NCBI GenBank assembly: GCA_002269645.1
Contig: NIVC01000010.1
Span: 372,001-436,000 of the forward strand
DNA length: 64,000 nucleotides
Direction of reading: 5' to 3'
Origin: Macrostomum lignano
Taxonomy: Eukaryota
In this document: positions 14,579 through 37,661 of the stretch, piece after piece
Position numbering within the stretch: position 1 is the stretch's first letter
Layout: every line of letters begins with the position of its first letter
Translations under genes and position numbers: made by a program
Notes under the pieces: model-generated
What the model saw: the letters and a program-made list of their open reading frames with translations, nothing else
Database searches by the model: none
What the model was told of the DNA's origin: nothing

Positions 14579-14629
14579 TTGACAGCTCTCTGATTGTATA
14601 CTGACATTGAATTGGATCCTGCCACCGAG

Positions 14630-15385
14630 CACGTCAGAATCCTGACACCATGTAAGCCAGAATCCTGACACCCAGCAATACAGAATCCTGACACCATGTA
14701 AGCTAGAATCCTGACACGAATCCTGACATCCTGTAAGCCAGAATCCTGACATCCTGTAAGCCAGAATCCTGACATCCTGTAAGCCAGAATCCTGACATCC
14801 TGTAAGCCAGAATCCAGACACCCAGTAATACAGAATCCAGACACCCAGTAATACAGAATCCAGACACCCAGTAATACAGAATCCAGACACCCAGTAATAC
14901 AGAATCCAGACACCCAGTAATACAGAATCCAGACACCCAGTAATACAGAATCCAGACACTCAGTAAGTCAGAATCCTGACACCCAGTAATACAGAATCCA
15001 GACACTCAGTAAGTCAGAATCCTGACACCCAGTAATACAGAATCCAGACACCCAGTAATACAGAATCCAGACACTCAGTAAGTCAGAATCCAGACACTCA
15101 GTAAGTCAGAATCCTGACACCCAGTAATACAGAATCCAGACACCCAGTAATACAGAATCCAGACACCCAGTAAGTCAGAATCCAGACACTCAGTAAGTCA
15201 GAATCCAGACACCCAGTAATACAGAATCCAGACACCCAGTAAGCCAGAATCCAGACACCCAGTAAGCCAGAATCCAGACACCCAGTAATACAGAATCCAG
15301 ACACTCAGTAAGTCAGAATCCAGACACCCAGTAATACAGAATCCAGACACCCAGTAAGCCAGAATCCAGACACCCAGTAAGTCAG
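14630..15385. repeat. 23-bp minisatellite (CAGAATCCAGACACCCAGTAATA/GTAAGT)n downstream of the CEP43 stop
   Basis: Tandem units, many containing CAGTAAGT or GTAAGC; an acceptor-like TTTGTTTTTCCTCAG ends at 15415. Confidence 0.93.
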
Positions 15386-19000: not shown

Positions 19001-22000
19001 GTGTACCAGTGCAACTGCACTAGTGGGTTGCCAGGCGCCTATCTCTACGCCAATGCCTACGTGAATGTAGTTGCTAGGCGGCCGAAGATTATAACTAAAC
19101 AGTTGGCCCACTGGGCCTGGGCAAACGCCAGTTTCACTCTGCCGTGTCGATCCGAGCCTCGGCCGGCTAAGGTAGAATGGACTCGCGTGAGCAGTGCGAC
19201 TCCCAGCAAGCAGGTCGACTTTCTCAATGGAGGTCGCTATCAGCTGCTGGGCCTGGAGTGGGGCGGACTGGCGGATTTGACTGTTGACAAATTGCAACTT
19301 AGCGACGGGGGTCAATACCGCTGCCGCCTGATTAACCAGTTTGGTGAGCTCCGACTCCTGATGAACACTGCACCCACCCCACCTCTGCTATAATGATTTC
19401 TCACTCCTGATGAACACTGCACCCACCCCACCTCCGCTATAATCATCTCCGACTAGTGATGTACAATGAACCCACCCCACCTCCGCTATAATCATCTCCG
19501 ACTAGTGATGTACAATGAATCCAGTTCACCTCCGCTATAATCATCTCCGACTAGTGATGTACAATGAATCCAGTTCACCTCCGCTATAATCATCTCCGAC
19601 TAGTGATGTACAATGAATCCAGTTCACCTCCGCTATAATCATCTCCGACTAGTGATGTACAATGAATCCAGTTCACCTCCGCTATAATCATCTCCGACTA
19701 GTGATGTACAATGAATCCAGTTCACCTCCGCTATAATCATCTCCGACTAGTGATGTACAATGAATCCAGTTCACCTCCGCTATAATCATCTCCGACTAGT
19801 GATGTACAATGAATCCAGTTCACCTCCGCTATAATCATCTCCGACTAGTGATGTACAATGAATCCAGTTCACCTCCGCTATAATCAGCTCCCTCACTCCT
19901 GATGTACACTGTACCTACACCACCTCGGCTTTGATCAGCTCCGACTCCTGATGTACACTGTACCCACCCCACCTCCGCTTTAATCAGCTCCCTCACTCCT
20001 GATGTACACTGTACCTACACCACCTCCGCTTTAATCAGCTCCCTCACTCCTGATGTACACTGTACCCACCCCACCTCCGCTTTAATCAGCTCCCTCACTC
20101 CTGATGTACACTGTACCTACACCACCTCGGCTTTGATCAGCTCCGACTCCTGATGTACACTGTACCTACACCACCTCGGCTTTGATCAGCTCCCTCACTC
20201 CTGATGTACACTGCACCCACCCCACCTCCGCTATAATAAGCTCCTACTCCTAATGTACACTGCACCCACCCCACCTCCGCTATAATAAGCTCCTACTCCT
20301 AATGTACACTGCACATATTTACTCGCTGATTTATTCACGCACCAAACCCACCGCAGGCTCGGCATCTGTACAGCAGAACCTGACTGTGCTTCAACCCACC
20401 CGTGTCCTGGCCGGTCCAGCCGACGCCCTGGCCGACGGCCGGGCCTACCCAGCTGAAGCCGAAGAGCTCCGCCTGCCCTGTCGAGTAGCCGTGGATTCGC
20501 GCCTAGCAACAATTCCGGGTAGCAACAGGATTGTCTCAGTCAGTATCAGCTGGCTCAAAGACGGCCTGGCGCTGACGCCCTCGTCAACAACTTTGACTCG
20601 CAAGATTGACAGCTCCGATGCGAAAGCGGAACTTTTAGAGTTTGAAGACTGGCTGGTGCTGTCGCCTGTTCAACCTCAACACGCCGGCAGATACGCTTGC
20701 TCGGCAGGAGCCGTTGCCATGGTAACTAGTATGAGATCCGCCGATCCGGGCGACACAAGCTACACCGGCTTGTTGCGAGTTGTTGAGCCGCCAAGAGCGC
20801 CCAGGGCTTTGCTGCTAATTGGCTGCAACTCTGGCCTGGCCACACTGGCTTGGTCATCGCCGTCGGAGTCTGTTAATGAGACTGCAGCGAATGCTAACGT
20901 TATCAATAGTGTTGCTACTAGTTACGCGGTTGAATTTTCCGAGCAATATTCGAGCTACACAAGATGGCATGCGGTAGAGCACTGCGGCAGTGTTACCGAT
21001 TTGCGCTGTGAAGTTCGTCTGCTGCCCAGTTTGGCGCTCAAATTCAGAGTTCGGGCGCTTAACCTAGCGGGGCCCGGACCGCCGTCTGAGTGAGTCTTTG
21101 TCATTGTGGGCTATTGTGTCAGTTAGTCTTTGTCATTGTAGGCTATTGTGTCAGTTAGTCTTTGTCATTGTAGGCTATTGTGTCAGTTAGTCTTTGTCAT
21201 TGTAGGCTATTGTGTCAGTTAGTCTTTGTCATTATAGGCTATCGTGTCAGTTAGTCTTTGTCATTGTAGGCTATCGTGTCAGTTAGTCTTTGTCATTGTA
21301 GGCTATCGTGTCAGTTAGTCTTTGTCATTGTAGGCTATCGTGTCAATGAGTCTTTGTCATTGTAGGCTATCGTGTCAATGAGTCTTTGTCATTGTAGGCT
21401 ATCTGTCAATGAATCTTTGTCATTGTGGGTTATCGTGTCAGTCTTTGTCATTGTAGGCTATCGTGTCAGTTAGACTTTGTCATTGTAGGTTACCGTGTCA
21501 GTTAGTCTTTGTCATTGTGGGTTATCGTGTCAGTTAGTCTTTTTCATTTTGGGCTATCGTGTCAGTTAGTCTGTCATTGTAGGCTATTGTGTCAGTCTGT
21601 CATTGTAGGCTATCGTGTCAGTTAGACTTTGTCATTGTAGGTTACCGTGTCAGTTAGTCTTTGTCATTGTAGGCTATCGTGTCAGTTAGTCTTTGTCATT
21701 GTAGGCTATCGTGTCAGTTAGTCTTTGTCATTGTAGGCTATCGTGTCAGTTAGTCTTTGTCATTGTAGGCTATCGTGTCAATGAGTCTTTGTCATTGTGG
21801 GTTATTGTGTCAGTTAGTCTTTGTCATTGTAGGCTATCGTGTCAGTTAGTCTTTGTCATTGTAGGCTATCGTGTCAATGAGTCTTTGTCATTGTGGGTGA
21901 GCTATCCTAACCTCCGAACCCCGCGTCCCACCCAGTCCGCCGCTGGACGTGACATCGGACTCTGATTGTCGCTCCGAACCGAAGCCCCCCTCCGCTAATC

Positions 22001-25000
22001 CAACCGAGCTTCGAGTTGACGGCGGCAGCTGCCACAACGTCGAAATTTTAGGACAACCACCTCGCCTGCGGATTCGCTGGCGGCCGGTGTCTCCGTTGGC
22101 CATCAATGGGCCAGGATTTGCCTATAGCCTGACTGTCGCATGCGAAGATTGTCGCTCCGCTCCTATTGGCCAGCAATATGCGACTCGAATCGACGGCTTT
22201 CAACAGGACTGTTTAGTGTTGCATAGTCTGGAAATTGACGGCAAAGATTATCCTATTGAGGCCTATCGCACCTATCGTGTCGAGGTGAGTTATCTAATAA
22301 ACTTTCATTTCTCCACCCACCTCACTTCGCTCTGTACCCACCTCACTCCGCTCTGCAACCACTTCACTCTAATCTGCAGCCACCTCACTCCGCTACGCAC
22401 CCACCTCTATCCGTTCTGCACCCACCTCTATCCGTTCTGCACCCACCTCACTCCGCTACGCACCCACCTCTCTCCGTTCTGTACCCACCTCACTCCGCTC
22501 TGCACCGACCTCACTCCGCTCTGCACCGACCTCACTCCGCTCTATCTCTACCTCCTATATGGCTCACTTATTGAACCACTATTCGGCCCTAGATTCTCTC
22601 TGTAAACAACCTGGGCAACTGCTGCACTAATTCGGCATCCAAGATTGCTGCAACAGCTTCTGCCTCAGGTCGTAGCAGTGAAACAGCGCCTGAAGTGGCG
22701 CCAAAACGCCTGCGGCAGCTGCAAATGGCACCGGCTACTGCCGAAGTGAAAGCAGAACAAGTGGAGCCTAGCGAAGGCGCCGATGTGTGGCTCGCCTGGG
22801 ATATGCCAATGGTAAGAATACTTTAAATGTGACGCTAATACTGGCGGAAAATGTGACGCTAATACTGGCGGAAAATGTGACGCTAATACTGGCGGAAAAT
22901 GTGACGCTAACCCTAGCGCCAAATGAGATGCATTTTTGCGCCTAATGTGACGCTAATCCTGGCGCCAAATGAGATGCTTTTTTGCGCCTAATGTGACGCT
23001 AATCCTGGCGCCAAATGAGATGCTTATCTTGGCGCAAAATGTGACGCTAATCCCGGCGCCAAATGTGACGCTTATCTTGGCGCAAAATGTGACGCTAATC
23101 CCGGCGCCAAATGTGACACTTATCTTGGCGCCAAATGTGACGCTAATCCTGGCGCCAATTGTGTCGCTTTTTGGTGTTTATTTTGACGCGCAAATGTGAA
23201 GCTTTTTGGCGTTAAATGTGACGCTAATATTGGCGCTAATAACGTCTCCCCCTCTCGCCTAAAAACCCATCAGAATCCCCAGACTGACCAGCGCATGAAC
23301 GGTGAATTCCGCGGCTACCGAGTCGATTGGTGCGCAGCCGCTGCTCAGGCCGACTGTCTGGATTTGCTGGCACCGCTCGGTCGATATGAAAAATCCAAAA
23401 CTATTGAGGCCAGCCTAGCCGGGTCTGTTGACATTCTAGTTGACCAAGTGTACAGGCTCGATACTACTAATGCCAGCAGTAGTAGCTACTGCGCTAAAGT
23501 AACCGAACTGCCTGGCGATACTTGGCTGCGCTTGCGACTGCGGCCGGTTAACTCGGCCGGACTGGCTGCGTCCGAGGCGGCGCTGCTGACGCTGCGGACT
23601 CGAGAGGCTCGGCCGGGGCCGGTCGGCGAATTCACTCTGTTGGGCGCGGCAGGTGCCGATCGGCTGGAGCTGGCCTGGACCAGACCGGCCAGGACCAACG
23701 GCCGGTTGCTGGGCTTCTCGCTGGCCTGGAGCGAGGTGAGGAGGCTGAGGCTGTTTTTTGAGCGATTTTTTAGCTTTTTGAAGCATTCAAGTAGGCATGA
23801 GCGGGTCAATCTAGAGAGGCGCCAAAATGTGCGAGGCACCAAACTAAGCTTTGAGTGGCGCCAATCTAAGATATGAGAGGCACCAAACTAAGCTTTGAGT
23901 GGCGCCAATCTAAGATATGAGAGGCACCAAACTAAGCTTTGAGTGGCGCCAATCTAAGATATGAGAGGCACCAAACTAAGCTTTGAGTGGCGCCAATCTA
24001 AGATATGAGAGGCACCAAACTAAGCTTTGAGTGGCGCCAATCTAAGATATGAGAGGCACCAAACTAAGCTTTGAGTGGCGCCAATCTAAGATATGAGAGG
24101 CACCAAACTAAGCTTTGAGTGGCGCCAATCTAAGATATGAGAGGCACCAAACTAAGCTTTGAGTGGCGCCAATCTAAGATATGAGAGGCACCAAACTAAG
24201 CTTTGAGTGGCGCCAATCTAAGATATGAGAGGCACCAAACTAAGCTATGAGAGGCGCTAATCTGAGATGAGAGGCGCCAAACTAAGATTTTAAAGGCGCC
24301 AGACTAAGCTATGAGAAGCGCTAATCTGAGATATGAGAGGCGCCAAACTAAGATTTTAGAGGTGCCAGTCTAAGCTATGAGAGGCGCTAATCTGAGATAT
24401 GAGAGGCGCCAAACTAAGCTATGAGAGGCGCTAATCTAAGATACGCGAGGCGCCAAACTAAGCTATGAGAGGCGCTAATCTAAGATACGCGAGGCGCCAA
24501 ACTAAGCTATGAGAGGCGCTAATCTAAGATACGCGAGGCGCCAAACTAAGCTATGAGAGGCGCTAATCTAAGATACGCGAGGCGCCAAACTAATTAGATG
24601 CGGGGGGCGCTAAGATACGGGGGGCGCCAAACTAATAAGATACGCGCCAAACTAATCAGATACGCGCCAAACTAATCAGATACGCGCCAAACTAATCAGA
24701 TACGCGCCAAACTAATCAGATGCGCGCCAAACTAATCAGATGCGCGCCAAACTAATCAGATACGCGCCAAACTAATCAGATGCGCGCCAAACTAATCAGA
24801 TACGCGCCAAACTAATCAGATACGCGCCAAACTTAGTCCATCAAGCTCTCCTCCAACCCCTGCAGATCCGAGGCCTCCGCCTGCTCCAGCTGGTCCAGCT
24901 GCCGCCAATCGTGGATCCCTGGCAGAGCCGGGCCACTCTGTCCGACCTGAGTCCGGGCTCCGCCTACAGGGTCTACCTGACAGCTCGGACACTGGCCGGC

Positions 25001-26962
25001 GATGGTCCGCCTTCCTGGCTGGACGTTCGGACAGTCGGCGACTCGCTGCTGCCTCCAGGGGCTCCGTCTTTTTCTGTGGCCGCCCTGCCAAACGGCGGCC
25101 TAAATGTCACCAATTTGATTCAGCGGCCCTTTCTAGTGCAGTATCGTCGGCTACTACTGCCCGGCTCAAGTGTCGGCAGTAGTATAAATAGCGATTCTAC
25201 TAAGAAAGATTCGAATCGCTGGCTGGAGACCAGGCGCGAGAGCCGGCGCTCCTGGCTGCTGATTGACGGCCTCGAGCCCGGTGCGTGGTACGAGGTTCGC
25301 GTCGCCACTCCGGGCGGCGTAGCTTTCGCCAACTGGGCCCGGGTTCGAACCTCGGACCTTGGCGTTAACGCCGGCGTTGGCGACGACGATGGCGGAGACT
25401 CGGACGCCGCAGCCGCAGCCGCTGCTCTGTTGAATGGCCGCGGTGCCTGGCTGATCAGCCTCTGTCTGCTGCTTGTCGGCACCACCGCCTGCGTGGCCTG
25501 CCTGTGCGGCCTCCGGCGCCGGGCCGCCGCCGGTTCCTCGGCGCCGCGGCCAGCTGGCAGCGATGGTGCTGTACAGCGACCGGAGACTGAGGCTGAGCCC
25601 ATGGGCTTGCTGGCTGGCGAAGGTAGCTGGCTGGGGATATAGACTTGGGTTCTTTTTATCCCATCTACCTGGGTTCTAATTATCCCATCTGCCAGGATTC
25701 TAATTATCCCATCTACCTGGGCTCTAATTATCCCATCTACCTGGGCTCTAATTATCCCATCTATCTGGGTTCTAATTATCCCATCTACCTGGGTTCTAAT
25801 TATCCCATCTATCTGGGTTCTTTTTATCCCATCTACCTGGGTTCTTTTTATCCCATCTACCTGGGTTCTAATTATCCCATCTATCTGGGTTCTAATTATC
25901 CCATCTACCTGGGTTCTAATTATCCCATCTATCTGGGTTCTTTTTATCCCATCTACCTGGGTTCTTTTTATCCCATCTACCTGGGTTCTTTTTATCCCAT
26001 CTTCCTGGATTCTAATCATCCCATCTACCTGGATAACTAATTATCCCATCTTCCTGGATTCTAATTATCCCATCCATTGTATTCCAATCATCCTATTCCA
26101 CCTGCAACTGCAACCATGGCACACTCTTTACTTCAATTTCAACAAAATGTTTTATTTCAACTGTAAAATCAGAATTCCAAGATCCCAACTCATCTGCAAC
26201 TTCATTCTTCCGTGAACTTCCTCAACAGATCGCAACGGGGATGCCCATCGCTCATCTGGAGCCAGAGTGGCAGCTCGACAGTCTGCGACTGGCCGATTCG
26301 AAAACGAGTTTCCAAGGAGGCAACGAATGCTCGAATCCAATGGCCGCAGTCGGCAGGGTCGAGTTGAACTGCTTGAAGCTGCGTTGCTGGCGAATCACAG
26401 CAGAGGTTAGTTGGGGTCACAAGATTAGAGTAGATGGGTTACAGGGTTAGAGTAGATGGGATCACAGAATTAGAGTAGATGGGATCACAGGAATAGAGTA
26501 GATGGGGGTCACAGGATTCAAGTAGATGGGTCACAGGATTAGAGTAGATGGGGTTACAGGAAAAGAGTAGATGGGTCACAGGATTAGAGTAGATGGGGTT
26601 ACAGGAAAAGAGTAGATGGGTCACAGGATTAGAGTAGATGGGGTTACAGGAAAAGAGTAGATGGGGTTACAGGAAAAGAGTAGATGGGGTTACAGGAAAA
26701 GAGTAGATGGGTCACAGGATTCGAGTAGATGGGATCACAGGATTAGAGTAGATCTTAGGCTAAAACAGGATTTTTATACCAGTTTATACAGGATTCTCAC
26801 ACCTTTCCCCAAATGCACCTGTATATCTGTGCTAAAATTACAGATGTACGTGGAACTCAGCTTCCCAACAGGAAAACAACTCCGCAAGCAACTTCATCAA
26901 ATGCAGCATCATTGTCAAGCAGTGGCCCGTCATTTGCCTTCCCCTATCAGACTAGAGTCTAA
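16036..26962 (+). CDS. L1/neuroglian-family Ig-superfamily cell adhesion molecule (signal peptide, 6 Ig, 5 FN3, TM, tail ending QTRV), 1498 aa
   Basis: 12 GT-AG exons with consistent phases: 16036-16120, 16636-16833, 17028-17327, 17530-18006, 18723-19343, 20357-21089, 21936-22284, 22593-22811, 23274-23735, 24866-25622, 26229-26405, 26844-26962 (sum 4497 nt). Ig Cys/Trp patterns (VTLECGAFGDPPPNLVW, YRC, YQC, YAC) are present. The L1-type Ig2 motif RMGIDPSNGALLFASVRQSD...YRC, FN3 motifs (RVRALNLAG, YRVYLTART) and TM WLISLCLLLVGTTACVACLCGL are also present. The last two exons are less certain. Confidence 0.88.
16212..16590. repeat. 27-bp G-rich minisatellite (GGGGAGTGGGGTGTGTGTTCTGGGGTC)n, intron 1
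   Basis: About 14 units, each with three GGGG runs. Confidence 0.95.
18060..18330 (+). mobile_element. tRNA-derived SINE (family A)
   Basis: A box-like GTAGTCTAGTGG and B box-like GGCTCGATTCC. The body (CACAGTGAAGTGTACATGCCTAACGAT...GTTAGGGCCGCTGTACACTC) recurs inverted at ~50160-50460 and ~57500-57768. Confidence 0.7.
18337..18594 (+). mobile_element. Short copy of the hAT-like MITE family (3 units of CTCATTTTGGCGCCGCAG)
   Basis: Shares TTTTAAGAATCG..GCGCTCATTTT(A/G)GCGCCGCAG and G-run/C-run subtermini with 44533-49716. Confidence 0.65.
19345..20330. repeat. ~49-bp minisatellite with two unit variants
   Basis: CTCCGACTAGTGATGTACAATGAATCCAGTTCACCTCCGCTATAATCAT and variants; begins at the donor GTGAGCTCCGACTCC. 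Confidence 0.93.
21090..21900. repeat. 32-bp minisatellite (GTGTCAGTTAGTCTTTGTCATTGTAGGCTATC)n
   Basis: Begins at the donor itself (GTGAGTCTTTGTCATTGT). Confidence 0.95.
22310..22550. repeat. 21-bp minisatellite (CACCCACCTCACTCCGCTCTG)n
   Basis: Tandem units filling the intron 22285-22592. Confidence 0.9.
22825..23240. repeat. 24-bp minisatellite (AATGTGACGCTAATCCTGGCGCCA)n
   Basis: Tandem units filling the intron 22812-23273. Confidence 0.9.
23815..24835. repeat. Higher-order minisatellite: 44-bp unit (two diverged 22-mers) grading into 20-22-bp GCGCCAAACTAA units
   Basis: GAGGCACCAAACTAAGCTTTGA+GTGGCGCCAATCTAAGATATGA repeated, followed by CGCGCCAAACTAATCAGATA. Confidence 0.92.
25645..26090. 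repeat. 24-bp minisatellite (CTAATTATCCCATCTACCTGGGTT)n
   Basis: Tandem units starting ~22 nt after the donor at 25623. Confidence 0.93.
26410..26750. repeat. ~24-bp minisatellite (GATTAGAGTAGATGGGATCACAG)n
   Basis: Tandem units starting at the donor at 26406. Confidence 0.9.
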
Positions 26963-28764: not shown

Positions 28765-31700
28765 ATGCCCGCAGCTGCAGCAAGGGCAGCATCAGCACCC
28801 ACTCGCTCATCAGTCATGGCCGGCGCCATCATGGACTCATTCTACGAAGTGTACAAAACTGCAGCCAACGAGATGGGCCTTCGGGATCGGAACTGGAAGC
28901 AGGAGAAATTCTTTCATCCGCCTGGAGTTGCCGATAGTCAGGTTGACCAGGCGGCCAGCCAGCACGGGCACAGCCACGGCCCCGATGGAGCCTGCCCTTC
29001 CACAGCCGGCAACTCCCACAGTCAGCAGCCCCTGCTGCCGCTGCCGCCGCCGCCGCCGCCAAAGACAATATTCGACGCGGCGAGAAATAACGACATGCAG
29101 TTCCTGCGCTCGGCTGCAGTTGACGGCATCGAAGGTCTGGCAGTCAGGGACTCGTCCGGCCACACGGTGGCTCACTGGGCCTGCCTACACGGTCACCTGG
29201 ATGTTGTCGCCTACCTAGCGGAGGTCAGCTCCAATAGCAAAGGCGTCATTAACCTTTGCCATCGTGCTAGCAGTCACGAACTGGCGCAGTACCCGATTCA
29301 CTGGGCCTGCGTGAACGGTCACGTGCCAGTTGTTGAATTCCTGCTCGACCGCTGCTCGGTTGATATCGACGTTCGCGATGCCAAAGGCGCCACGCCGCTG
29401 ATTATCGCCTGCCAATACGGCCAGACTGTGACGGCCGGCTACCTGCTCAGCAGGGGGGCGAATCGAACCAGCGCCGGCGACAACGAAGGCGACACGCCGT
29501 TGCACTGGGCCGCGTTCAAAGGCCAGCCGGACCTCATGCGCCTGCTGGTGTACTCCGGCTTCAACCCGCACCAGAGGGACGCCTTCGGCCAGACGCCGCT
29601 GCACTTGGCCAGCATTGCTGGAAACATTAACGCTGTCAGGGACCTGTGCCGGGTGGACAAGGTCAGCATGGACTGTCGATCCTCCCGCATGCTTTCAACC
29701 AACACTCACTGCGAATTTCACTTTCATGACTCCTGAGGTGGAGGGTGTGTGACTCCTGAGGTAGAGGGTGTGTGACTCCTGAGGTGGATTGGGTGTGACT
29801 TCTGAGGTGGATTTGGTGTGACTCCTGAGGTGGAGGGTGTGTGACTCCTGAGGTGGAGGGTGTGTGACTCCTGAGGTGGAGGGTGTGTGACTCCTGAGGT
29901 GGAGGATGTGTGACTCCTGAGGTGGATTGGGTGTGACTTCTGAGGTGGATTGGGTGTGACTTCTGAGGTGGATTGGGTGTGACTCCTGAGGTGGATGGGG
30001 TGTGACTCCTGAGGTAGAGGGTGTGACTCCTGAGGTGGATTGGGTGTGACTTCTGAGGTGGATTGGGTGTGACTCCTGAGGTGGAGGGTGTGTGACTCCT
30101 GAGGTGGAGGGTGTGTGACTCCTGAGGTGGATTGGGTGTGACTCCTGAGGTGGATTGAGTGTGACTCCTGAGGTGGATTGGGTGTGACTCCTGAGGTGGA
30201 TTGGGTGTGACTCCTGAGGTCGATGGGGTGTGACTCCTGAGGTGGATTGGGTGTGACTCCTGAGGTGGAGGGTGTGTGACTCCTGAGGTGGATGGGGTGT
30301 GACTCCTGAGGTGGATTGGGTGTGACTCCTGAGGTGGATTGGGTGTGACTCCTGAGGTGGATAGGGTGTGACACCTGAGGTCGATGGGTGTTGACACCTG
30401 AGGTGGATGGGTGTTGACATCTGAGGTGGAGGGTGTTGACTCCTGAGGTGGATTGGGTGTGACTCCTGAGGTGGATTGGGTGTGACTCCTGAGGTGGATT
30501 GGGTGTGACACCTGAGGTGGATGGGTGTACACATCTGAGGTGGAGGGTGTTGACACCTGAGGTGGATGGGTGTGACACCTGAGGTGGATGGGTGTTGACA
30601 CCTGAGGTGGAGGGTGTTGACTCCTGAGGTGGATAGGGTGTGACACCTGAGGTGGATGGGTGTTGACATCTGAGGTGGATAGGGTGTGACACCTGAGGTG
30701 GATGGGTGTTGACATCTGAGGTGGAGGGTGTTGACACCTGAGGTGGATGGGTGTTGACACCTGAGGTGGATGGGTGTTGACATCTGAGGTGGAGGGTGTT
30801 GATACCTGAGGTGGATGGGTGTTGACACCTGAGGTGGAGGTTGACTCAATCCCCAGCCCGTCCCCATGCTGCCCCGCAGGTTGAGCTGAACGTGGCGGAC
30901 AAGAACGGCAAGACGCCGCTGATGCTGGCAGCCGGCCGCAGGCACGATCAGGTTGAGCGCTTCCTCAAGGCCGAGATTCGATCCCGAGCCTCCATGCTCG
31001 GCGCCCGGTTCCGCTGGAGTCACCTGATATTCGGGCCGCCCGGCAACAGCAAAGCTCCCATGCTGTTCCTGCTGTTCTGCATACTGGTTTGGGGCTATCC
31101 GACCTACGTGAGCAAAGCCGTGCCGCTCACCTTTCACCTGTTCCCCTGGCTGCACTGGGCTTTCCTATTGCTCAACGCGTTGATGTGGTTCGCTTTCTAT
31201 CACGCCAACACCTCAGATCCGGGATTCTTGCCGAGGAATGTCCCAGAATACGATAGGGCTATCCAGCAGGCCGGGGTGAACTCTGCCGATATCGGCTTGG
31301 GCCGGATGGGCAACCCGTTAGAGAGGCTGTGCCACACCTGCCGCTGCGTGAAACCTGTTCGAGCTAAGCACTGCCGAGTGTGCGATCGCTGCGTGTTAGA
31401 GATGGACCATCACTGCCCGTACATCTACAACTGCATTGGCAAGAATAATAGGTATGCTGCAGTGCGGGGTGTTATGATTAGTTAGTGTCATTCCAAGGTG
31501 TTATGATGATATAGAGTTATGCAAGATGTTATGATCAGATAGTGTTATGTAAGATGTTATGCTCAGTTAGTGTTATTCCTAGATGTTATGATCAGTTAGT
31601 GTTATGATCAGATAGTGTTATGCAAGGGTGTTATGATCAGTTAGTGTTATGCAAGGGTGTTATGATCAGTTAGTGTTATGCAAGGGTGTTATGATCAGAT

Positions 31701-34700
31701 AGTGTTATGCAAGGTGTGTTATGATCAGATAGTGTTATGCAAGGTGTGTTATGATCAGATAGTGTTATGCAAGGTGTGTTATGATCAGATAGTGTTATGC
31801 AAGGTGTGTTATGATCAGATAGTGTTATGCAAGGTGTGTTATGATCAGTTAGTGTTATGCAAGGTGTGTTATGATCAGATAGTGCTATGCAAGGTGTGTT
31901 ATGATCAGTTAGTGTTATGCAAGGTGTGTTATGATCAGATAGTGTTATGCAAGTTGTGTTACGCTAGGTTATTTTTGGAAAACTTTTCATCCTTTTTTCT
32001 TTTAACTATGCTCGTAAATTTTTAAATCTCTGCAAGCCGCTAGCTGAAACACATTGCCGTTAATAAATCTTATTCTGTTCAAAGATTTGCATTCGCCGTA
32101 TTATCTGTCACGCTGATGACGCTGGGCGGCATGACCATGGTGCTGGCCGCAGCCACCCTCTGGCTTGGCGGCATGGACTGGATTGTCCTGCTTGGCACCG
32201 TCATTGCCACGTTCGGTCTGACTGTTGGCTCCGTTGTGTCCTCCTGTGTGGTGAGACCGCCTGGCTGCCCTGTTCAGGGGAAGAGAGGGGTGCAGTTAGG
32301 AGTGGGCTGTGGATAGGGAGCTAAACAGGGAATGGAGAGACAGGGAGAAGGGAGGGAAGGGCAGAAGAAGGGATAGAAGGGGAGAAGAAGGGAGAGAAGG
32401 GGAGAAGAAGGGAGAGAAGGGGAGAAGAAGGGAGAGAAGGGGAGAAGAAGGGAGAGAAGGGGAGAAGAAGGGATAGAAGGGGAGAAGAAGGGATAGAAGG
32501 GGAGAAGAAGGGAGAGAAGGGGAGAAGAAGGGAGAGAAGGGGAGAAGAAGGGAGAGAAGGGGAGAAGAAGGGAGTGACAGGGAGAAAATGGAAGAGACAG
32601 GGAGAGAAGGGGAGGGAAGGGGAGAAGTAGGGAGCATGAAAGAGACAAAGGGAGCTCAGCGAGAGCCACTGATTAGGTAAAAGTCTCAATTAGGATTAAG
32701 GAATATTTGCAGCTTTAGCAATATTCAGCTGAAAATCTTGCTTCAAGTTTCAAGCAGTGCCGTTAATTTGTGCGCGTTTCTGCCAGATTTCGATAAAAAT
32801 TCTGCATTTTTACCCCACCCCCCCTTAACTAATTGTGGCAGTGGGTACTCATACCTGCATTTTGAGTTTAGAAAATACTCGTTTGGCATATTTGACATAA
32901 CAACTATTTTTGGCATGTTTTGCTTTTCTTTTTTGTGCTGCATTTGTTGATACGCCAAATGTTTTTCTATAAATGTCTATTTAGCTTAAATTGACTTTTT
33001 TAATTAATCTGGTATTCGTACGTATTGCTGTTCAAGTTCTGAATTTCCCTTTTCTGTTACATCCTTCACTTCTAACTCTCTTTCACTTTAAATAATCCCT
33101 TCACTCCTACTTCCCTTCATCCCTCCTTCCCTTCATCTCCACTTCCCTTCATCCCCCACTTCCCTTCATCCCCCACTTCCCTTCATCCCCCACTTCCCTT
33201 CATCCCCCACTTCCCTTCATCCTGCTTCCCTTTATCCCCCACTTCCCTTCATCCCTCTTTCCCTTCATCCCCCACTTCCCTTCATCCCTCTTTCCCTTCA
33301 TCCCCACTTCCCTTCATCAATACTACCCTTCATCGCTCTGCCCTCTCAATTGCCCATTACTGCGTCTCAATATGCTTTGTTATGTTATCGGCAAAGTATT
33401 AATTTATGTTACACAACGCCAAAGTAGCAGTGTTTTCATATTAATCTATCCCCTACATTGCTGCCTCCCCACCAACCCGGCACGCTGCCCTCGCAGACAC
33501 AGCTTTCTGTTGTTCACAACATTTATAACAGCGGCCGGAGTTCTGTCGCTGCTTATTACATATGTTGTGTGGCGCGTCGAAGGCTCCCCAGCGCGCTATC
33601 ACTATTTAATTGGCGTAGTGCTCCAGATGGCATTTGGCGCGCTGCTATTAGTATTGAATCCTTTTGGCGTAAGAGATTCGTGTACTCGCCTTGACTTGCG
33701 TCTTCTTTTGCATTATTGATTTTTTTGCTTCTGCAATGTGTTTCCTTTGTCCCATTACAAGTTTCTATCACTCTATACAGCCCCATAATCCAAGTATAAA
33801 AACCCCAGCCAGACCCCTCCCTCACCCCAGTGTACACACTGGCCCCAGCCAGTCCCCTCCCTCACTCCAGTGTACACACTGGCCCCAGCCAGTCCCCTCC
33901 CTCACTCCAGTGTACACACTGGCCCCAGCCAGTCCCCTCCCTCACTCCAGTGTACACACTGGCCCCAGCCAGTCCCCTCCCTCACTCCAGTGTACACACT
34001 GGCCCCAGCCAGTCCCCTCCCTCACTCCAGTGTACACACTGGCCCCAGCCAGTCCCCTCCCTCACTCCAGTGTACACACTGGCCCCAGCCAGTCCCCTCC
34101 CTCACTCCAGTGTACACACTGGCCCCAGCCAGTCCCCTCCCTCACTCCAGTGTACACACTGGCCCCAGCCAGTCCCCTCCCTCACTCCAGTGTACACACT
34201 GGCCCCAGCCAGTCCCCTCCCTCACTCCAGTGTACACACTGGCCCCAGCCAGTCCCCTCCCTCACTCCAGTGTACACACTGGCCCCAGCCAGTCCCCTCC
34301 CTCACTCCAGTGTACACACTGGCCCCAGCCAGTTCCCTTCCTAACCGCAGTGTACACACTGGCCCCAGCCAGTCCCCTCCCTCACTCCAGTGTACACACT
34401 GGCCCCAGCCAGTTCCCTTCCTAACCGCAGTGTACACCTGACCCCAGCCAGTCCCCTCCCTCACTCCAGTGTACACACTGGCCCCAGCCAGTCCCCTCCC
34501 TCACTCCAGTGTACACACTGGCCCCAGCCAGTCCCCTCCCTCACTCCAGTGTACACACTGGCCCCAGCCAGTTCCCTTCCTAACCGCAGTGTACACACTG
34601 GCCCCAGCCAGTCCCCTCCCTCACTCCAGTGTACACACTGGCCCCAGCCAGTTCCCTTCCTAACCGCAGTGTACACACTGGCCCCAGCCAGTCCCCTCCC

Positions 34701-35248
34701 TCACTCCAGTGTACACACTGGCCCCAGCCAGTTCCCTTCCTAACCGCAGTGTACACCTGACCCCAGCCAGTCCCCTTCCTAACCACAGTGTACACATTAC
34801 CTTTTGTAATACTTGTTCAATGTGATTCTATTTGCCTGTTTTTTCAATTCCATGTGAGTTTTTTCATAGAGATAATTTAAGCACAGTATTCCGATTCCTG
34901 GCAGAAAGGCACAAATTCACTGCACCTTTTTTGCACTTTTCTTAAAGCTTGAAGCAAATTTGTACTACTTAGTATCTAGATATAAGTAGCTAAAGTAGGA
35001 CAATGCTAGATTTAATTATTTTCCTGCCTAATAATCTTCAGTGGTACCACGCCGCAATCAACATGACCACAAACGAGAGCATGAACAAGAAGCGCTACAC
35101 CTACTTGAAAGATTCAAATGGCAATTTCCGCAATCCGTTCGATCGCGGCATCGTTAATAATCTATTGGAGTTCTGTCACATGAGATCGCCCAGGTATACG
35201 GCGCATGAACTGTCCGAAATCAAGTGTCCGTCGCATATGATGGTGTGA
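28765..35248 (+). CDS. Ankyrin-repeat DHHC protein S-acyltransferase (HIP14/ZDHHC17/Patsas-type)
   Basis: Exons 28765 (or ATG 28816)-29661, 30880-31451, then 32085-32250 OR 33497-33668, then 35042-35248. Ankyrin repeats GHTVAHWAC, QYPIHWAC, GATPLIIAC, GDTPLHWAA, GQTPLHLAS, GKTPLMLAA. Catalytic CHTC..KPVRAKHCRVCDRCVLEMDHHCPYIYNCIGKNN. TTxE (MTTNE) and NPFDRGIVNNLLEF (PaCCT-like) are in the last exon. Confidence 0.93.
29722..30840. repeat. ~23-25-bp minisatellite (GTGTGACTCCTGAGGTGGATTGG)n
   Basis: Tandem units filling DHHC intron 1. Confidence 0.95.
31490..31965. repeat. 30-bp minisatellite (GTTATGATCAGATAGTGTTATGCAAGGTGT)n
   Basis: Tandem units in DHHC intron 2. Confidence 0.93.
32330..33335. 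repeat. GA-rich array (32330-32660) and CT-rich array (33100-33335) between the two alternative exons
   Basis: AGAAGGGGAGAAGAAGGGAG units, then CCCCCACTTCCCTTCAT units. Confidence 0.9.
33497..33668 (+). CDS. Alternative (mutually exclusive) TM3-TM4 exon of the DHHC gene
   Basis: CCTCGCAG| acceptor and |GTAAGA donor. 172 nt, phase 2 to 0, identical phases to 32085-32250. Reads (R)HSFLLFTTFITAAGVLSLLITYVVWRVEGSPARYHYLIGVVLQMAFGALLLVLNPFG. Confidence 0.78.
33800..34800. repeat. 40-bp minisatellite (CAGTGTACACACTGGCCCCAGCCAGTCCCCTCCCTCACTC)n
   Basis: About 24 near-perfect units. Confidence 0.95.
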
Positions 35249-35419: not shown

Positions 35420-36210
35420 TCCTTTTTCCGTTCCTTCCCTGCCCTCCCTTTCCCTTCCCTCTCCCTCCCTCTCTCTTTCTCTCTGTCATTCTCTCTCTCC
35501 CTCTCCCTCCCTCTCCCTCTGCCTCCCTTCCCTCTCCCTCCCTCTCTCTTTCTCTCTCTCATTCTCCCTCTCTCCCTCTGCCTCCCTTCCCTCTCCCTCC
35601 CTCTCTCTTTCTCTCTCTCATTCTCCCTCTCTCCCTCTCCCTCCCTCTCCCTCTGCCTCCCTTCCCTCTCCCTCCCTCTCTCTCTGCCTCCCTTCCCTCT
35701 CCCTCCCTCTCTCTTTCTCTCTCTCATTCTCCCTCTCTCCCTCTCCCTCCCTCTCCCTCTGCCTCCCTTCCCTCTCCCTCCCTCTCTCTCTGCCTCCCTT
35801 CCCTCTCCCTCCCTCTCTCTTTCTCTCTCTCCCTATACCTTTCTCCCTCTCCCTCCCTCTCCCTTTCCCTCTCTCTTTCTCCCTCTCTCCCTCTCCCTCC
35901 TTCTCCCTCTGCCTCTCTCCCTCTCTCCCTCTCTCCCTCTCCCCCCCTTCCTTTTCCTCTCTCCCTCTCTCCCTCTCTCTCCCTCTCCTTCTCTCCCTGT
36001 CTCACCTTCCCTCCTCCTACTTCCCTGACGAAGAGTAACTTAACTCCAACTATCAGCAACTTAAACTAAATAATCTTCTATTAATCCTTTCACCTTGTCA
36101 GCGCTTGAAATTGGAGGCGCCCTCCACTCTGCCCCTCGCCTTCTCTCCCTTCCTTCTTTCCTCACTTCTCCTCTTCCCTCTCCCCCTACCTCCCCTTCTT
36201 CTCCCTTCTC
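35420..36210. repeat. CT-rich low-complexity tract
   Basis: Polypyrimidine sequence downstream of the DHHC stop. Confidence 0.9.
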
Positions 36211-36935: not shown

Positions 36936-37661
36936 TCACTCAAGCCGGAACTTGACCCAGTCGGCGCTCGTCTCGATCTCCGCCTCCACCTGAGCGTCGG
37001 TGAACAGCAGCAGGCGGCAGGCTCTCAGCTTGCTGTTGTACAGCACGTGTCTGCAGCTGCCGTAAATCATAGCGGCTGCAACGCACTCAAAATCGCTGCT
37101 CACATTCGGCACATCAGTGAAGCAGTACTCGGAGTTGAAGCTCTGGCGCTTGAAGGCAGCGGCCGTCCAGACGCCGGCAGTCGGCGGTCGGGTATCGTCC
37201 GCGAACTCACAGGCAAATCCGAAGCTCAATTTGCAGTTGAAGTCAGCCAGGGTCTTGCCTGCGCGCAGTCGGAGGCAGTTGTCGGTAACTCCACCATTCG
37301 GCTCACCAGTGTGAAACAGGCTGCCGTCCTCCGGGAAGATGCCGTTTCCGTTGACCCTCCGCCAGCCGGCTCTGTTCTGGTTTCTCTCATCGGCCAGGTC
37401 GCTCAGTCCGACCCACAGGTCGCAGCTGCAGATGGCACTGGGGATTTTCCCCATGCGAAACTTCTTGATGGAGCTGTGCGAGTTGACGAGCTCGCCTCCG
37501 ATCGATGCGCACTGCCGATTGGCTGAGCACCAGCTGTGGCTGTGAGCTGTGCTCACGAACAGGCACAGACCGGCCTGCATGGTGAACGGTGCGGGACACG
37601 GCAGGGCCTGCGACTGCAGCAGCAGCAGCAGCAGCAATGGCTGCATCATTGATTTTCGCAA
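36936..37661 (-). CDS. Secreted C-type lectin + C-terminal PAN/apple-like domain, copy 1 (EPN), intact
   Basis: Poly-Leu signal peptide; CTLD C..HSWCSANRQC..GGELV, LWVGLSD, EPN, C.RL, LADFNC..FACEF. Cys-rich C-terminus YCFTDVPNVSSDFECVAAAM..SCRHVLYNSKLRACRL (PAN-like is an inference). Single exon. Confidence 0.88.
   Translation of the reverse strand: MRKSMMQPLLLLLLLQSQALPCPAPFTMQAGLCLFVSTAHSHSWCSANRQCASIGGELVNSHSSIKKFRMGKIPSAICSCDLWVGLSDLADERNQNRAGWRRVNGNGIFPEDGSLFHTGEPNGGVTDNCLRLRAGKTLADFNCKLSFGFACEFADDTRPPTAGVWTAAAFKRQSFNSEYCFTDVPNVSSDFECVAAAMIYGSCRHVLYNSKLRACRLLLFTDAQVEAEIETSADWVKFRLE

What the first reader, a model, noticed from the sequence alone, without database searches (positions are those of the whole stretch)
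32085..33668. Mutually exclusive exons swap the TM3-TM4 helices of a DHHC palmitoyltransferase
Seen: two exons (32085-32250, 166 nt; 33497-33668, 172 nt) both have canonical splice sites and phase 2 to 0. Both encode two hydrophobic helices around a W..G loop and splice in frame between DHHC...NNR and W.HAAINMTTNE. Including both shifts the frame and loses TTxE/PaCCT; skipping both also shifts it. Established: in zDHHC enzymes, TM3/TM4 residues line the acyl cavity and set fatty-acyl chain-length preference (zDHHC20 Tyr181/Ser217, zDHHC3 Ile182). Inference: one gene makes two enzymes with different lipid or substrate selectivity through splicing.
Basis: partly seen in the sequence, partly recalled or inferred. 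Interest (0 to 1): 0.75.

Follow-up and report, generated by a model that had tools for sequence, protein, structure and literature searches.

The report
Ancient alternative-exon pair in a palmitoyltransferase
A flatworm gene for a protein-palmitoylating enzyme carries two interchangeable exons that each encode the third and fourth membrane helices, and the same exon pair exists in molluscs, an annelid and a ribbon worm, so this is an old, conserved way of making two versions of the enzyme's lipid-binding wall.

Summary
The window (Macrostomum lignano or a very close relative) holds a five-exon ankyrin-repeat DHHC gene of the Patsas / "S-acyltransferase 23-like" group. Exons A (32085-32250, 166 nt) and B (33497-33668, 172 nt) have GT-AG sites and the same phase. 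Each alone gives an intact enzyme (613 or 615 aa). Both together, or neither, shift the frame.

New here: the pair is not a flatworm oddity. Haliotis rubra has a 166-nt exon followed by a 172-nt exon at the same place, in the same phase and order. Lineus has both in that order as well. RefSeq or deposited isoforms that differ only in this segment exist in Haliotis, Pomacea, Biomphalaria and Owenia. In bivalves the isoforms differ here and just downstream. Isoforms from nine non-spiralian species share one 55-aa segment, and the Saccoglossus locus has one exon.

Two M. lignano paralogues each keep only one type, which looks like complementary loss after duplication.

No transcript of this particular gene could be found. 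The idea that the isoforms differ in lipid or substrate choice remains untested: the swapped piece covers the cavity-ceiling positions, but they show no consistent type-specific pattern across species.

Verdict: a real, ancient tandem-duplicated mutually exclusive exon pair. It is a new member of a known kind, and my literature searches found no description of it.

The parts
28765..29661 (+). Coding exon 1: N-terminal low-complexity stretch plus ankyrin repeats. The start codon is uncertain: the ATG at 28765, or the in-frame ATG at 28816, which aligns with the paralogue's start. Donor AAG|gtcagc.
   Evidence: ORF list; Pfam Ank_2 at 181 bits; junction inferred from the alignment to paralogue P0002...VDK|V.xNVADxNG.
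30880..31451 (+). Coding exon 2: last ankyrin repeat, TM1, TM2 and the cysteine-rich DHHC domain. It ends AAT AAT AG|gt, with two bases of the Arg codon in this exon.
   Evidence: Pfam DHHC PF01529; helices 59-84 and 89-111 of the model.
32085..32250 (+). Alternative exon A: 166 nt, completing the Arg codon plus 55 codons. Encodes TM3, a short loop (GGMDW) and TM4. This is the ancestral-length '55-aa' type.
   Evidence: tblastn hits come only from 55-type segments. Best pairwise match is Lineus 55-type. Same length, phase and first position as the Haliotis 166-nt exon. AlphaFold helices 191-219 and 223-252 with block-mean pLDDT 93-98. GC3 is 0.73, like the constitutive exons.
33497..33668 (+). 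Alternative exon B: 172 nt, completing the Arg codon plus 57 codons. Encodes TM3, a loop two residues longer by aligned sequence (EGSPARYHY), and TM4. This is the spiralian '57-aa' type.
   Evidence: Scores 35.9 bits against the 57-type profile versus 11.6 bits against the 55-type profile. Identity to the paralogue P0002 segment is 51% (E=1e-19). Same length, phase and second position as the Haliotis 172-nt exon. AlphaFold helices 191-218 and 225-254 with block-mean pLDDT 84-95.
35042..35248 (+). Last coding exon: WYHAAINMTTNE (TTxE motif), the conserved NPFDRG...N C-terminal motif, and stop TGA at 35246-35248.
   Evidence: N, P and G of this motif are nearly invariant in the family alignments.
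32738..32786 (+). Upstream arm of a unique intronic inverted repeat, about 490 nt downstream of exon A. A candidate RNA pairing element (hypothesis only).
   Evidence: the repeat finder I1 and I2 are collinear. This is the best duplex partner of 34890-34965 among all intron windows, at -54.8 kcal/mol against a background of -21.4 +/- 7.3.
34898..34957 (+). Downstream arm of the inverted repeat, about 85 nt upstream of the last exon. Pairing with 32738-32786 would loop out exon B.
   Evidence: The joined arms fold at -51.9 kcal/mol against -28 +/- 3.7 for shuffles, z = -6.4 (the arms were pre-selected, so the z-score is optimistic). Neither arm is repeated elsewhere in the window.
32346..32634 (+). 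Purine-rich 20-bp minisatellite in the A-B intron, complementary as RNA to the pyrimidine-rich array at 33096-33334.
   Evidence: TRF; duplex energies of -62 to -67 kcal/mol per 60-nt window against a background of -18.8 +/- 11.5.
33096..33334 (+). Pyrimidine-rich 17/32-bp minisatellite in the A-B intron, the partner of the array at 32346-32634.

Best explanation
The window holds an ankyrin-repeat DHHC S-acyltransferase gene of the Patsas / 'S-acyltransferase 23-like' group. The exon for the TM3-loop-TM4 hairpin was duplicated in tandem in an ancestor of Spiralia, and the two copies are used as mutually exclusive alternatives. Exon A keeps the ancestral 55-residue form that all animals have. 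Exon B is the derived 57-residue form, with a longer luminal loop.

Splicing exon 2 to A to the last exon gives a 613-aa enzyme. Splicing exon 2 to B to the last exon gives a 615-aa enzyme. Both share the same ankyrin domain, TM1, TM2, catalytic DHHC domain and C-terminus. Because 166 and 172 are not multiples of three, only one-exon products are enzymes.

Shown here: the anatomy; the homology of both exons to the family segment; the conservation of the pair in order, phase and nucleotide length between flatworm and abalone, and in order in Lineus; exon-swapped isoforms in other spiralians; and complementary retention of one type each in two M. lignano paralogues.

Inferred: that both forms are expressed from this gene, and that they differ functionally. 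The swapped hairpin forms two of the four walls and most of the ceiling of the acyl-chain cavity, and it also carries the only luminal loop that differs. The most likely difference is therefore in acyl-CoA chain preference, or in fit to membranes of different thickness or compartment. The ankyrin-mediated substrate docking is unchanged. Exon choice may be helped by a long-range intronic RNA pairing that loops out exon B. That last point is a hypothesis only.
For: Anatomy and frames. Family: Pfam DHHC at 82 bits (isoform A) and 100 bits (isoform B), Ank_2 at 181 bits; homologues named Patsas / S-acyltransferase 23.

Both isoforms model as four-TM DHHC folds. TM3/TM4 block-mean pLDDT is 93-98 (A) and 84-95 (B), and both hit zDHHC9, zDHHC20 and zDHHC15 at probability 1.00.

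Orthologous pair in Haliotis rubra: a 166-nt exon then a 172-nt exon, after an exon ending AAT AAT AG|gt. Lineus has a 55-type exon followed by an intact, unannotated 57-type exon.

Annotated isoform pairs or triplets differ only in this segment in four Haliotis species, Pomacea, Biomphalaria and Owenia. Dreissena, three pectinids and Mytilus differ in this segment and also just downstream. One Logan contig of 2,069 nt encodes the full 55-type Pomacea isoform.

The pair is absent outside Spiralia in what I could examine: one exon in the Saccoglossus locus, and identical segments in the isoforms of nine non-spiralian species.

Cross-species typing: exon B scores 35.9 against 11.6 bits for the 57- versus 55-type profile. 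In the segment tree, A and B of one species never group together.

The three M. lignano genes are monophyletic (100% of 30 NJ bootstraps). P0002 has only a B-like exon and P0123 only an A-like exon. Cavity residues of zDHHC20 lie in TM3 and TM4 (PMC9006032, PMC9105814).
Against: No protein or transcript with either exact junction of this gene exists in the 5.8-billion-sequence collection. Use of both exons in M. lignano is therefore inferred, not seen.

Exon A is only weakly assigned to the spiralian 55-type by profile: 12.0 against 8.3 bits, and 18.0 bits to the non-spiralian profile. Exon B has lower GC3 (0.51) than the other exons (0.69-0.77).

Deep nodes of the segment tree have low bootstrap support, because the sequences are only 55-60 residues long.

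Positions that thread onto the zDHHC20 ceiling differ between A and B, but not in a way conserved between the two types in other species. The chain-length version of the functional claim therefore has no comparative support.

Premature stops of the both-exon and neither-exon products lie in the last exon, so frame alone may not police exclusivity.
Confidence: 0.78

Rival explanations
1. Only one of the two exons is still used in this flatworm gene. The other is a silent relic, because dedicated paralogues (P0002 for the B type, P0123 for the A type) already supply each form.
For: No transcript evidence for either junction. Exon B has atypical GC3 of 0.51. Exon A fits the 55-type profile poorly. 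The only public model of this gene (P0001) contains exon A and not exon B. Paralogues with one type each exist.
Against: Both exons are intact open frames with canonical acceptors, donors and polypyrimidine tracts. Both are recognisably homologous to their type in other phyla. Both give confident helical hairpins in the models. An unused exon would not be expected to stay intact for long.
Confidence: 0.13
2. The exon pairs arose independently, by convergent tandem duplication, in flatworms, molluscs, annelids and nemerteans, rather than once in a common ancestor.
For: Tandem exon duplication recurs convergently in many gene families (PMC9741552). Deep bootstrap support in the segment tree is weak. 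Extra lineage-specific copies exist: Biomphalaria and Owenia have three variants.
Against: The nucleotide lengths (166 then 172), order and phase are identical in Macrostomum and Haliotis, and the order is the same in Lineus. Exon B scores 24 bits better on the 57-type profile built without flatworm sequences. tblastn hits are strictly type-specific. A and B of one species never group together.
Confidence: 0.06
3. Both isoforms are made, but they do not differ in acyl-chain or substrate choice. Instead the alternative hairpin tunes something else: residence in membranes of different thickness (ER, Golgi or endosome), oligomerisation, partner binding or turnover.
For: The most consistent type-specific differences are loop length, a Trp/Ser switch at the start of TM3, a Gly in TM3, and the position of a polar Glu/Gln in TM4. 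They are not at the residues that thread onto the zDHHC20 ceiling. The ankyrin substrate-docking domain and the catalytic domain are constant.
Against: TM3 and TM4 carry Tyr181, Val185, Leu213 and Ser217 of the zDHHC20 cavity, and mutating Tyr181 shifts chain preference (PMC9006032, PMC9105814). In this gene the threaded residues do differ: Leu/Ala, Thr/Ser and Ala/Gln.
Confidence: 0.4

Closest known systems
Tandem duplicated exon substitution events, i.e. mutually exclusive homologous exons (examples: CACNA1C exon 8/8a, SCN alpha exon 5a/5b, SLC25A3 3A/3B; surveys PMC9741552, PMC8373072, PMC5740500)
   Same: Adjacent homologous exons of nearly equal length and the same phase. The isoforms are identical except for one homologous segment. 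The origin is ancient. Such events are enriched in transmembrane segments. Paralogues keep one exon each after gene duplication, as described for CACNA1F/CACNA1S and the FYN family (PMC9741552).
   Different: The gene family. No DHHC/ZDHHC gene is mentioned in the main text of PMC9741552, and my two literature searches for mutually exclusive exons in DHHC or palmitoyltransferase genes returned nothing relevant. The event is restricted to Spiralia, so human, fly and worm surveys would not have seen it.
Drosophila Patsas and the 'probable S-acyltransferase 23-like' ankyrin-repeat DHHC enzymes
   Same: N-terminal ankyrin repeats followed by a DHHC core with the motifs DHHCPYIYNCVG, N.TTNE and NPF.RG. 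Identity over the C-terminal half is 38-51%.
   Different: Arthropod, deuterostome and cnidarian members have a single 55-aa TM3-TM4 segment, and their annotated isoforms differ elsewhere. The window gene and other spiralian members have two or three alternatives.
Human zDHHC20, zebrafish zDHHC15 and human zDHHC9 (solved structures 6BML, 6BMS, 8HF3)
   Same: Same fold for both isoform models (Foldseek probability 1.00). The catalytic DHHC and TTxE motifs are present. TM3 and TM4 line the acyl cavity.
   Different: Only about 21-27% identity. No ankyrin domain in those structures. Tyr replaces the conserved Trp after DHHCP. The TM3-loop-TM4 unit is six residues shorter than in zDHHC20. No alternative hairpin is known for those enzymes.
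Docking-site / selector-sequence control of mutually exclusive exons (Drosophila Dscam exon 6, 14-3-3 xi; from my own knowledge)
   Same: A long-range intronic complementarity (32738-32786 with 34898-34957) brackets one alternative exon and ends close to the constitutive acceptor.
   Different: Only one pairing was found. There is no second selector for the other exon, no conservation test was possible, and the Haliotis and Lineus loci show only weak, chance-level inverted repeats in comparable positions.

Membership tests
DHHC (zDHHC) protein S-acyltransferases, Pfam PF01529 | Cysteine-rich domain with the Asp-His-His-Cys motif | tested here: met
   MDHHCPYIYNCIG in exon 2. PF01529 scores 82 bits (isoform A) and 100 bits (isoform B) against a cut-off of 28.7.
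DHHC (zDHHC) protein S-acyltransferases, Pfam PF01529 | Four-helix membrane core with the DHHC domain between TM2 and TM3 | tested here: met
   AlphaFold models give helices 59-84, 89-111, 191-219 and 223-252 (A), and 191-218 and 225-254 for TM3/TM4 (B). Foldseek hits zDHHC9, zDHHC20, zDHHC15 and Erf2 at probability 1.00 and TM about 0.5. The cysteine-rich domain itself is poorly modelled (pLDDT 39-53).
DHHC (zDHHC) protein S-acyltransferases, Pfam PF01529 | TTxE motif and conserved C-terminal Asn-containing motif after TM4 | tested here: met
   NMTTNE and RNPFDRGIVNN in the last exon. N, E, P and G are invariant or nearly invariant in alignments A1 and A2. Both motifs are lost if both exons or neither are included.
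DHHC (zDHHC) protein S-acyltransferases, Pfam PF01529 | Autoacylation and transfer of a fatty acyl chain to substrate cysteines | not testable with these tools
   Requires biochemical assay.
Patsas-like ankyrin-repeat DHHC subgroup | N-terminal ankyrin-repeat domain fused to the DHHC core, with closest relatives in this subgroup | tested here: met
   Ank_2 at 181 bits in exon 1. All top hits carry Ank plus DHHC domains and are named Patsas or S-acyltransferase 23/24. The gene groups with two M. lignano paralogues inside this family.
Tandem-duplicated mutually exclusive exons | Two adjacent exons homologous to each other, with the same phase and similar length | tested here: met
   166 and 172 nt, both entered after two codon bases and left at a codon boundary. 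Both align to the same family segment and both match the single-exon profile at about 18 bits.
Tandem-duplicated mutually exclusive exons | Only one-exon products keep the reading frame | tested here: met
   Translations of A, B, A+B and skip.
Tandem-duplicated mutually exclusive exons | Mature transcripts of this gene contain exactly one of the two exons, and both kinds occur | not testable with these tools
   No exact isoform of this gene is in the protein collection, and no RNA-seq reads are accessible. In orthologues, exon-swapped RefSeq isoforms exist, and a 2,069-nt Logan contig encodes the full 55-type Pomacea isoform.
Tandem-duplicated mutually exclusive exons | Both exons conserved in other species | tested here: met
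   Haliotis locus, Lineus locus, and isoform sets in gastropods, bivalves and Owenia.
RNA-structure (docking/selector) regulated exon clusters | Conserved competing intronic base-pairings, one per alternative exon | tested here: inconclusive
   One strong pairing brackets exon B. No second selector was found. Only chance-level inverted repeats occur in Haliotis and Lineus. No related Macrostomum sequence was available for a covariation test.

The most novel reading that the evidence does not exclude
The exon pair is a natural switch, more than 500 million years old and specific to Spiralia, that re-tunes the acyl-chain cavity (or the membrane fit) of one ankyrin-DHHC enzyme while leaving substrate docking unchanged. 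In Macrostomum the choice would be steered by competing long-range intronic RNA pairings: the inverted repeat that loops out exon B, set against the complementary purine and pyrimidine arrays inside the A-B intron. Later gene duplicates then hard-wired each form.
Probability: 0.25. Interest if true: 0.7.

Novelty: new member of a known kind. Interest (0 to 1): 0.52.

Why it matters
How DHHC enzymes choose fatty-acyl chain length, and how much that choice matters in vivo, is known mainly from point mutants of a few mammalian enzymes. Here evolution has kept two alternative versions of the two helices that form much of the acyl cavity, inside one gene, across at least four animal phyla. In one flatworm lineage it then split them into separate genes. 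That gives matched natural pairs (same ankyrin domain, same catalytic domain, different TM3-TM4) for testing what this hairpin controls.

It also adds an enzyme family to the catalogue of ancient tandem-exon substitutions, which is otherwise dominated by channels, transporters and cytoskeletal proteins.

Practically, it flags annotation errors: a frameshifted UniProt model of this gene, a fused model in Mya, and a missed exon in Lineus.

Tried and rejected
(1) I searched the 5.8-billion-protein collection with both spliced isoforms to find transcripts of this gene. The only hit from the gene was the frameshifted UniProt model P0001, so there is no direct expression evidence.

(2) Locus look-ups failed for Pomacea, Owenia, Ptychodera and Nematostella. 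I replaced them with isoform lists.

(3) I looked for an A-like exon in the P0002 loci and a B-like exon in the P0123 locus by tblastn at E up to 10. None was found.

(4) I looked for a third alternative exon or a relic in the window's introns by tblastn and by three profiles. None was found.

(5) I tried to map the cavity residues by HMMER alignment to zDHHC20. The alignment places an arbitrary six-residue gap in TM3. I therefore threaded without gaps from the conserved Phe171 and TTxE anchors. This gives Y181 to Leu (A) / Ala (B), V185 to Thr / Ser, L213 to Gly / Gly, and S217 to Ala / Gln. This is inference only, and the pattern is not conserved by type in other species, so I do not rely on it.

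(6) I looked for conserved intronic pairings in Haliotis and Lineus. Only short inverted repeats of 73-88% complementarity were found in comparable positions, and they are not distinguishable from chance.

(7) Literature searches for mutually exclusive exons in DHHC or palmitoyltransferase genes returned only unrelated papers. The nearest is a non-triplet cassette exon in C. elegans dhhc-4.

It is not: Ser217 is named as part of the cavity ceiling in PMC9105814.
Full report
WHAT IS THERE. The region lies in a eukaryotic gene on the + strand. The best database match is a Macrostomum lignano UniProt entry (P0001) that contains the exon-A peptide verbatim inside an otherwise frameshifted model. 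The next matches are two M. lignano paralogues. The window is therefore M. lignano or something extremely close to it.

I reconstructed the gene as five coding exons:
- exon 1, 28765-29661 (ankyrin repeats; Pfam Ank_2 at 181 bits)
- exon 2, 30880-31451 (TM1, TM2, DHHC domain)
- exon A, 32085-32250
- exon B, 33497-33668
- last exon, 35042-35248 (TTxE, C-terminal motif, stop)

All junctions are GT-AG. Every intron carries a minisatellite.

CHECK OF THE OBSERVATION. A alone gives 613 aa and B alone gives 615 aa. A+B or skipping both shifts the frame and removes TTxE and the C-terminal motif.

One refinement: in both aberrant products the premature stop falls in the terminal coding exon. Classical exon-junction-dependent NMD would therefore not obviously remove them, so exclusivity probably needs regulation of splice choice or is simply leaky.

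Both isoforms pass Pfam DHHC (82 and 100 bits). With family alignments, both model as the same four-helix DHHC core. The swapped segment is the best-predicted part: block-mean pLDDT is 93-98 for A and 84-95 for B, and the modelled inter-helix gap is three residues in A and six in B. Both models hit zDHHC9, zDHHC20, zDHHC15 and Erf2 structures at probability 1.00.

THE PAIR IS ANCIENT. Among about 130 family members, the segment between ...N-x-R and the N-x-T-T-x-E region comes in two length classes. A 55-residue form occurs in all animal groups. A 56-60-residue form was seen only in spiralians.

In the Haliotis rubra locus (L004) the same gene has, after an exon ending AAT AAT AG|gt, a 166-nt exon (13951-14116). 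About 400 nt further on is a 172-nt exon (14522-14693). These are the same nucleotide lengths, phase and order as exons A and B.

In Lineus longissimus (L005) the annotated 55-type exon (9441-9608) is followed by an intact, unannotated 57-type exon (12106-12279).

Isoform sets differ only in this segment in the following:
- four Haliotis species (539 versus 537 aa)
- Pomacea (538 versus 536 aa)
- Biomphalaria (three variants)
- the annelid Owenia (three deposited products)

In Dreissena, three pectinids and Mytilus the isoforms differ in this segment and also in the segment just downstream.

A 2,069-nt Logan contig encodes the complete 55-type Pomacea isoform, which is the size of a spliced transcript.

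Outside Spiralia, the Saccoglossus locus has a single exon and no second copy. The annotated isoforms of nine species share one identical 55-aa segment. Those species are Ptychodera, Apostichopus, Anneissia, Nematostella, Pieris, Centruroides, Coccinella, Cimex and Halyomorpha.

WHICH EXON IS WHICH. I built profiles without flatworm sequences. Exon B scores 35.9 bits on the 57-type profile and 11.6 on the 55-type profile. Exon A scores 12.0 and 8.3, and 18.0 on the non-spiralian single-exon profile.

So B is clearly the derived spiralian type. A is the ancestral-length type, but that assignment rests mainly on length, position and the GG(M/W)DW loop. tblastn hits into the window are strictly type-specific. 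In a neighbour-joining tree of the segments, A and B of one species never pair. Exon B joins the P0002 segment at 100% and sits among 57-type exons, and exon A joins Lineus-55 and P0123. Deep nodes are weakly supported.

PARALOGUES. On the constant regions, the window gene, P0002 and P0123 form one clade (100% of 30 bootstraps), so they duplicated within the flatworm lineage. P0002 (two near-identical loci, L001 and L002) has only a B-like exon. P0123 (L003) has only an A-like exon. No trace of the other type was found in either.

This is the pattern of complementary loss described for tandem-exon genes such as CACNA1F/CACNA1S and the FYN family (PMC9741552). It is independent evidence that each hairpin type supports a working enzyme in this lineage.

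FUNCTION. In zDHHC20 the acyl cavity is closed by Ser29 (TM1), Tyr181 and Val185 (TM3), and Leu213 and Ser217 (TM4). Y181A and S29F shift chain-length preference (PMC9006032, PMC9105814).

The HMMER alignment is ambiguous in TM3, so I threaded without gaps from the conserved Phe171 and TTxE anchors. The two exons then differ at three of the four positions: Leu/Ala, Thr/Ser and Ala/Gln (Gly/Gly at the fourth). This mapping is inference. The same positions do not differ consistently between the two types in other species.

The differences that are type-specific are these:
- the loop length
- Trp versus Ser at the second residue of TM3
- a Gly at position 14 of TM3
- the depth of a polar Glu/Gln in TM4

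I therefore commit to this reading: two isoenzymes with different lipid-facing and cavity properties and unchanged ankyrin docking. I leave open whether the read-out is acyl-chain preference, membrane or compartment fit, or partner binding.

POSSIBLE CONTROL ELEMENT. Within the three introns around the alternative exons, the only inverted repeats of 16 nt or more are two collinear pairs. Together they form one interrupted stem between 32738-32786 (A-B intron) and 34898-34957 (85 nt before the last exon).

That segment is the best duplex partner of the downstream arm among all intron windows: -54.8 kcal/mol against a background of -21.4 +/- 7.3. The joined arms fold at -51.9 kcal/mol with z = -6.4. 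That z-score is optimistic, because the arms were chosen for their complementarity. The sequence is unique in the window.

Pairing would loop out exon B and bring the exon-A donor near the final acceptor. Separately, the purine-rich and pyrimidine-rich minisatellites inside the A-B intron are strongly complementary.

I could not test conservation, and comparable positions in Haliotis and Lineus show only chance-level repeats. This remains a hypothesis.

WHAT IS MISSING. No transcript of this gene with either junction is in the collections I could search. Exon B has lower GC3 than the rest of the gene (0.51 against 0.69-0.77), and exon A is the one present in the only public model. I give about 0.13 to the possibility that one exon is no longer used in this particular gene.

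NOVELTY. Mutually exclusive tandem exons that encode membrane helices are a well-known kind. RefSeq already lists the mollusc isoforms as X1 and X2. I found no paper describing such an event in any DHHC enzyme. This is therefore a new member of a known kind, made more interesting by its age, its position in the acyl-binding wall, and the paralogue partitioning.

Noticed in passing
window 29727-30840, 31470-31961, 32346-32634, 33096-33334, 33803-34796, 35444-35993: Every intron of the gene, and the region just after the stop codon, carries a long minisatellite. Unit lengths are 23, 30, 20, 17/32, 40 and about 6-10 bp. The 40-bp array has about 25 copies at 94% identity.
   Followed up: partly
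window 32346-32634 and 33096-33334: The purine-rich and pyrimidine-rich arrays lie in the same intron, between exons A and B, and are complementary as RNA: -62 to -67 kcal/mol per 60-nt window against -18.8 +/- 11.5 background. They could fold the intron into a long imperfect duplex whose loop would contain the 32738-32786 arm.
   Followed up: partly
window 32738-32786 and 34898-34957: A unique interrupted inverted repeat brackets exon B and ends 85 nt before the last exon. It is a candidate exon-B looping-out element. No conservation test was possible.
   Followed up: partly
window 20302-25642 (+) and 36936-37661 (-): Neighbouring genes. Upstream is a multi-exon Ig/fibronectin-III receptor-like gene with a C-terminal hydrophobic stretch: fn3 at 34 bits, with weak Ig hits below the Pfam cut-offs. 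Downstream on the other strand is an ORF with a C-type lectin domain (24 bits).
   Followed up: partly
P0001 (UniProt A0A1I8FGU7), P0105 (Mya arenaria), L005 12106-12279 (Lineus): Annotation problems in public records. The M. lignano model of this gene is frameshifted and truncates exon A. A Mya arenaria model fuses pieces of both alternative exons into one protein. The Lineus 57-type exon is intact but absent from the deposited model.
   Followed up: partly
Isoform sets of Dreissena, Pecten/Argopecten/Mizuhopecten, Mytilus, Biomphalaria and Owenia: In bivalves the isoforms also differ in the residues just after the hairpin, around N-x-T-x-N-E, so the swapped unit is larger or has different boundaries there. 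Biomphalaria and Owenia have three alternative segments (55, 57 and 58 aa; 55, 58 and 60 aa).
   Followed up: no
window 33497-33668: Exon B has GC3 of 0.51, against 0.73 for exon A and 0.69-0.77 for the constitutive exons. The sample is small (57 codons), and the meaning is unclear.
   Followed up: no
L001 and L002 (GCA_002269645.1 contigs NIVC01001745.1 and NIVC01000426.1): The B-only paralogue is present on two contigs. The encoded protein is identical and the gene coordinates within each locus are the same, but the flanking called genes differ. This fits the recent large-scale duplication reported for M. lignano (my own knowledge).
   Followed up: no
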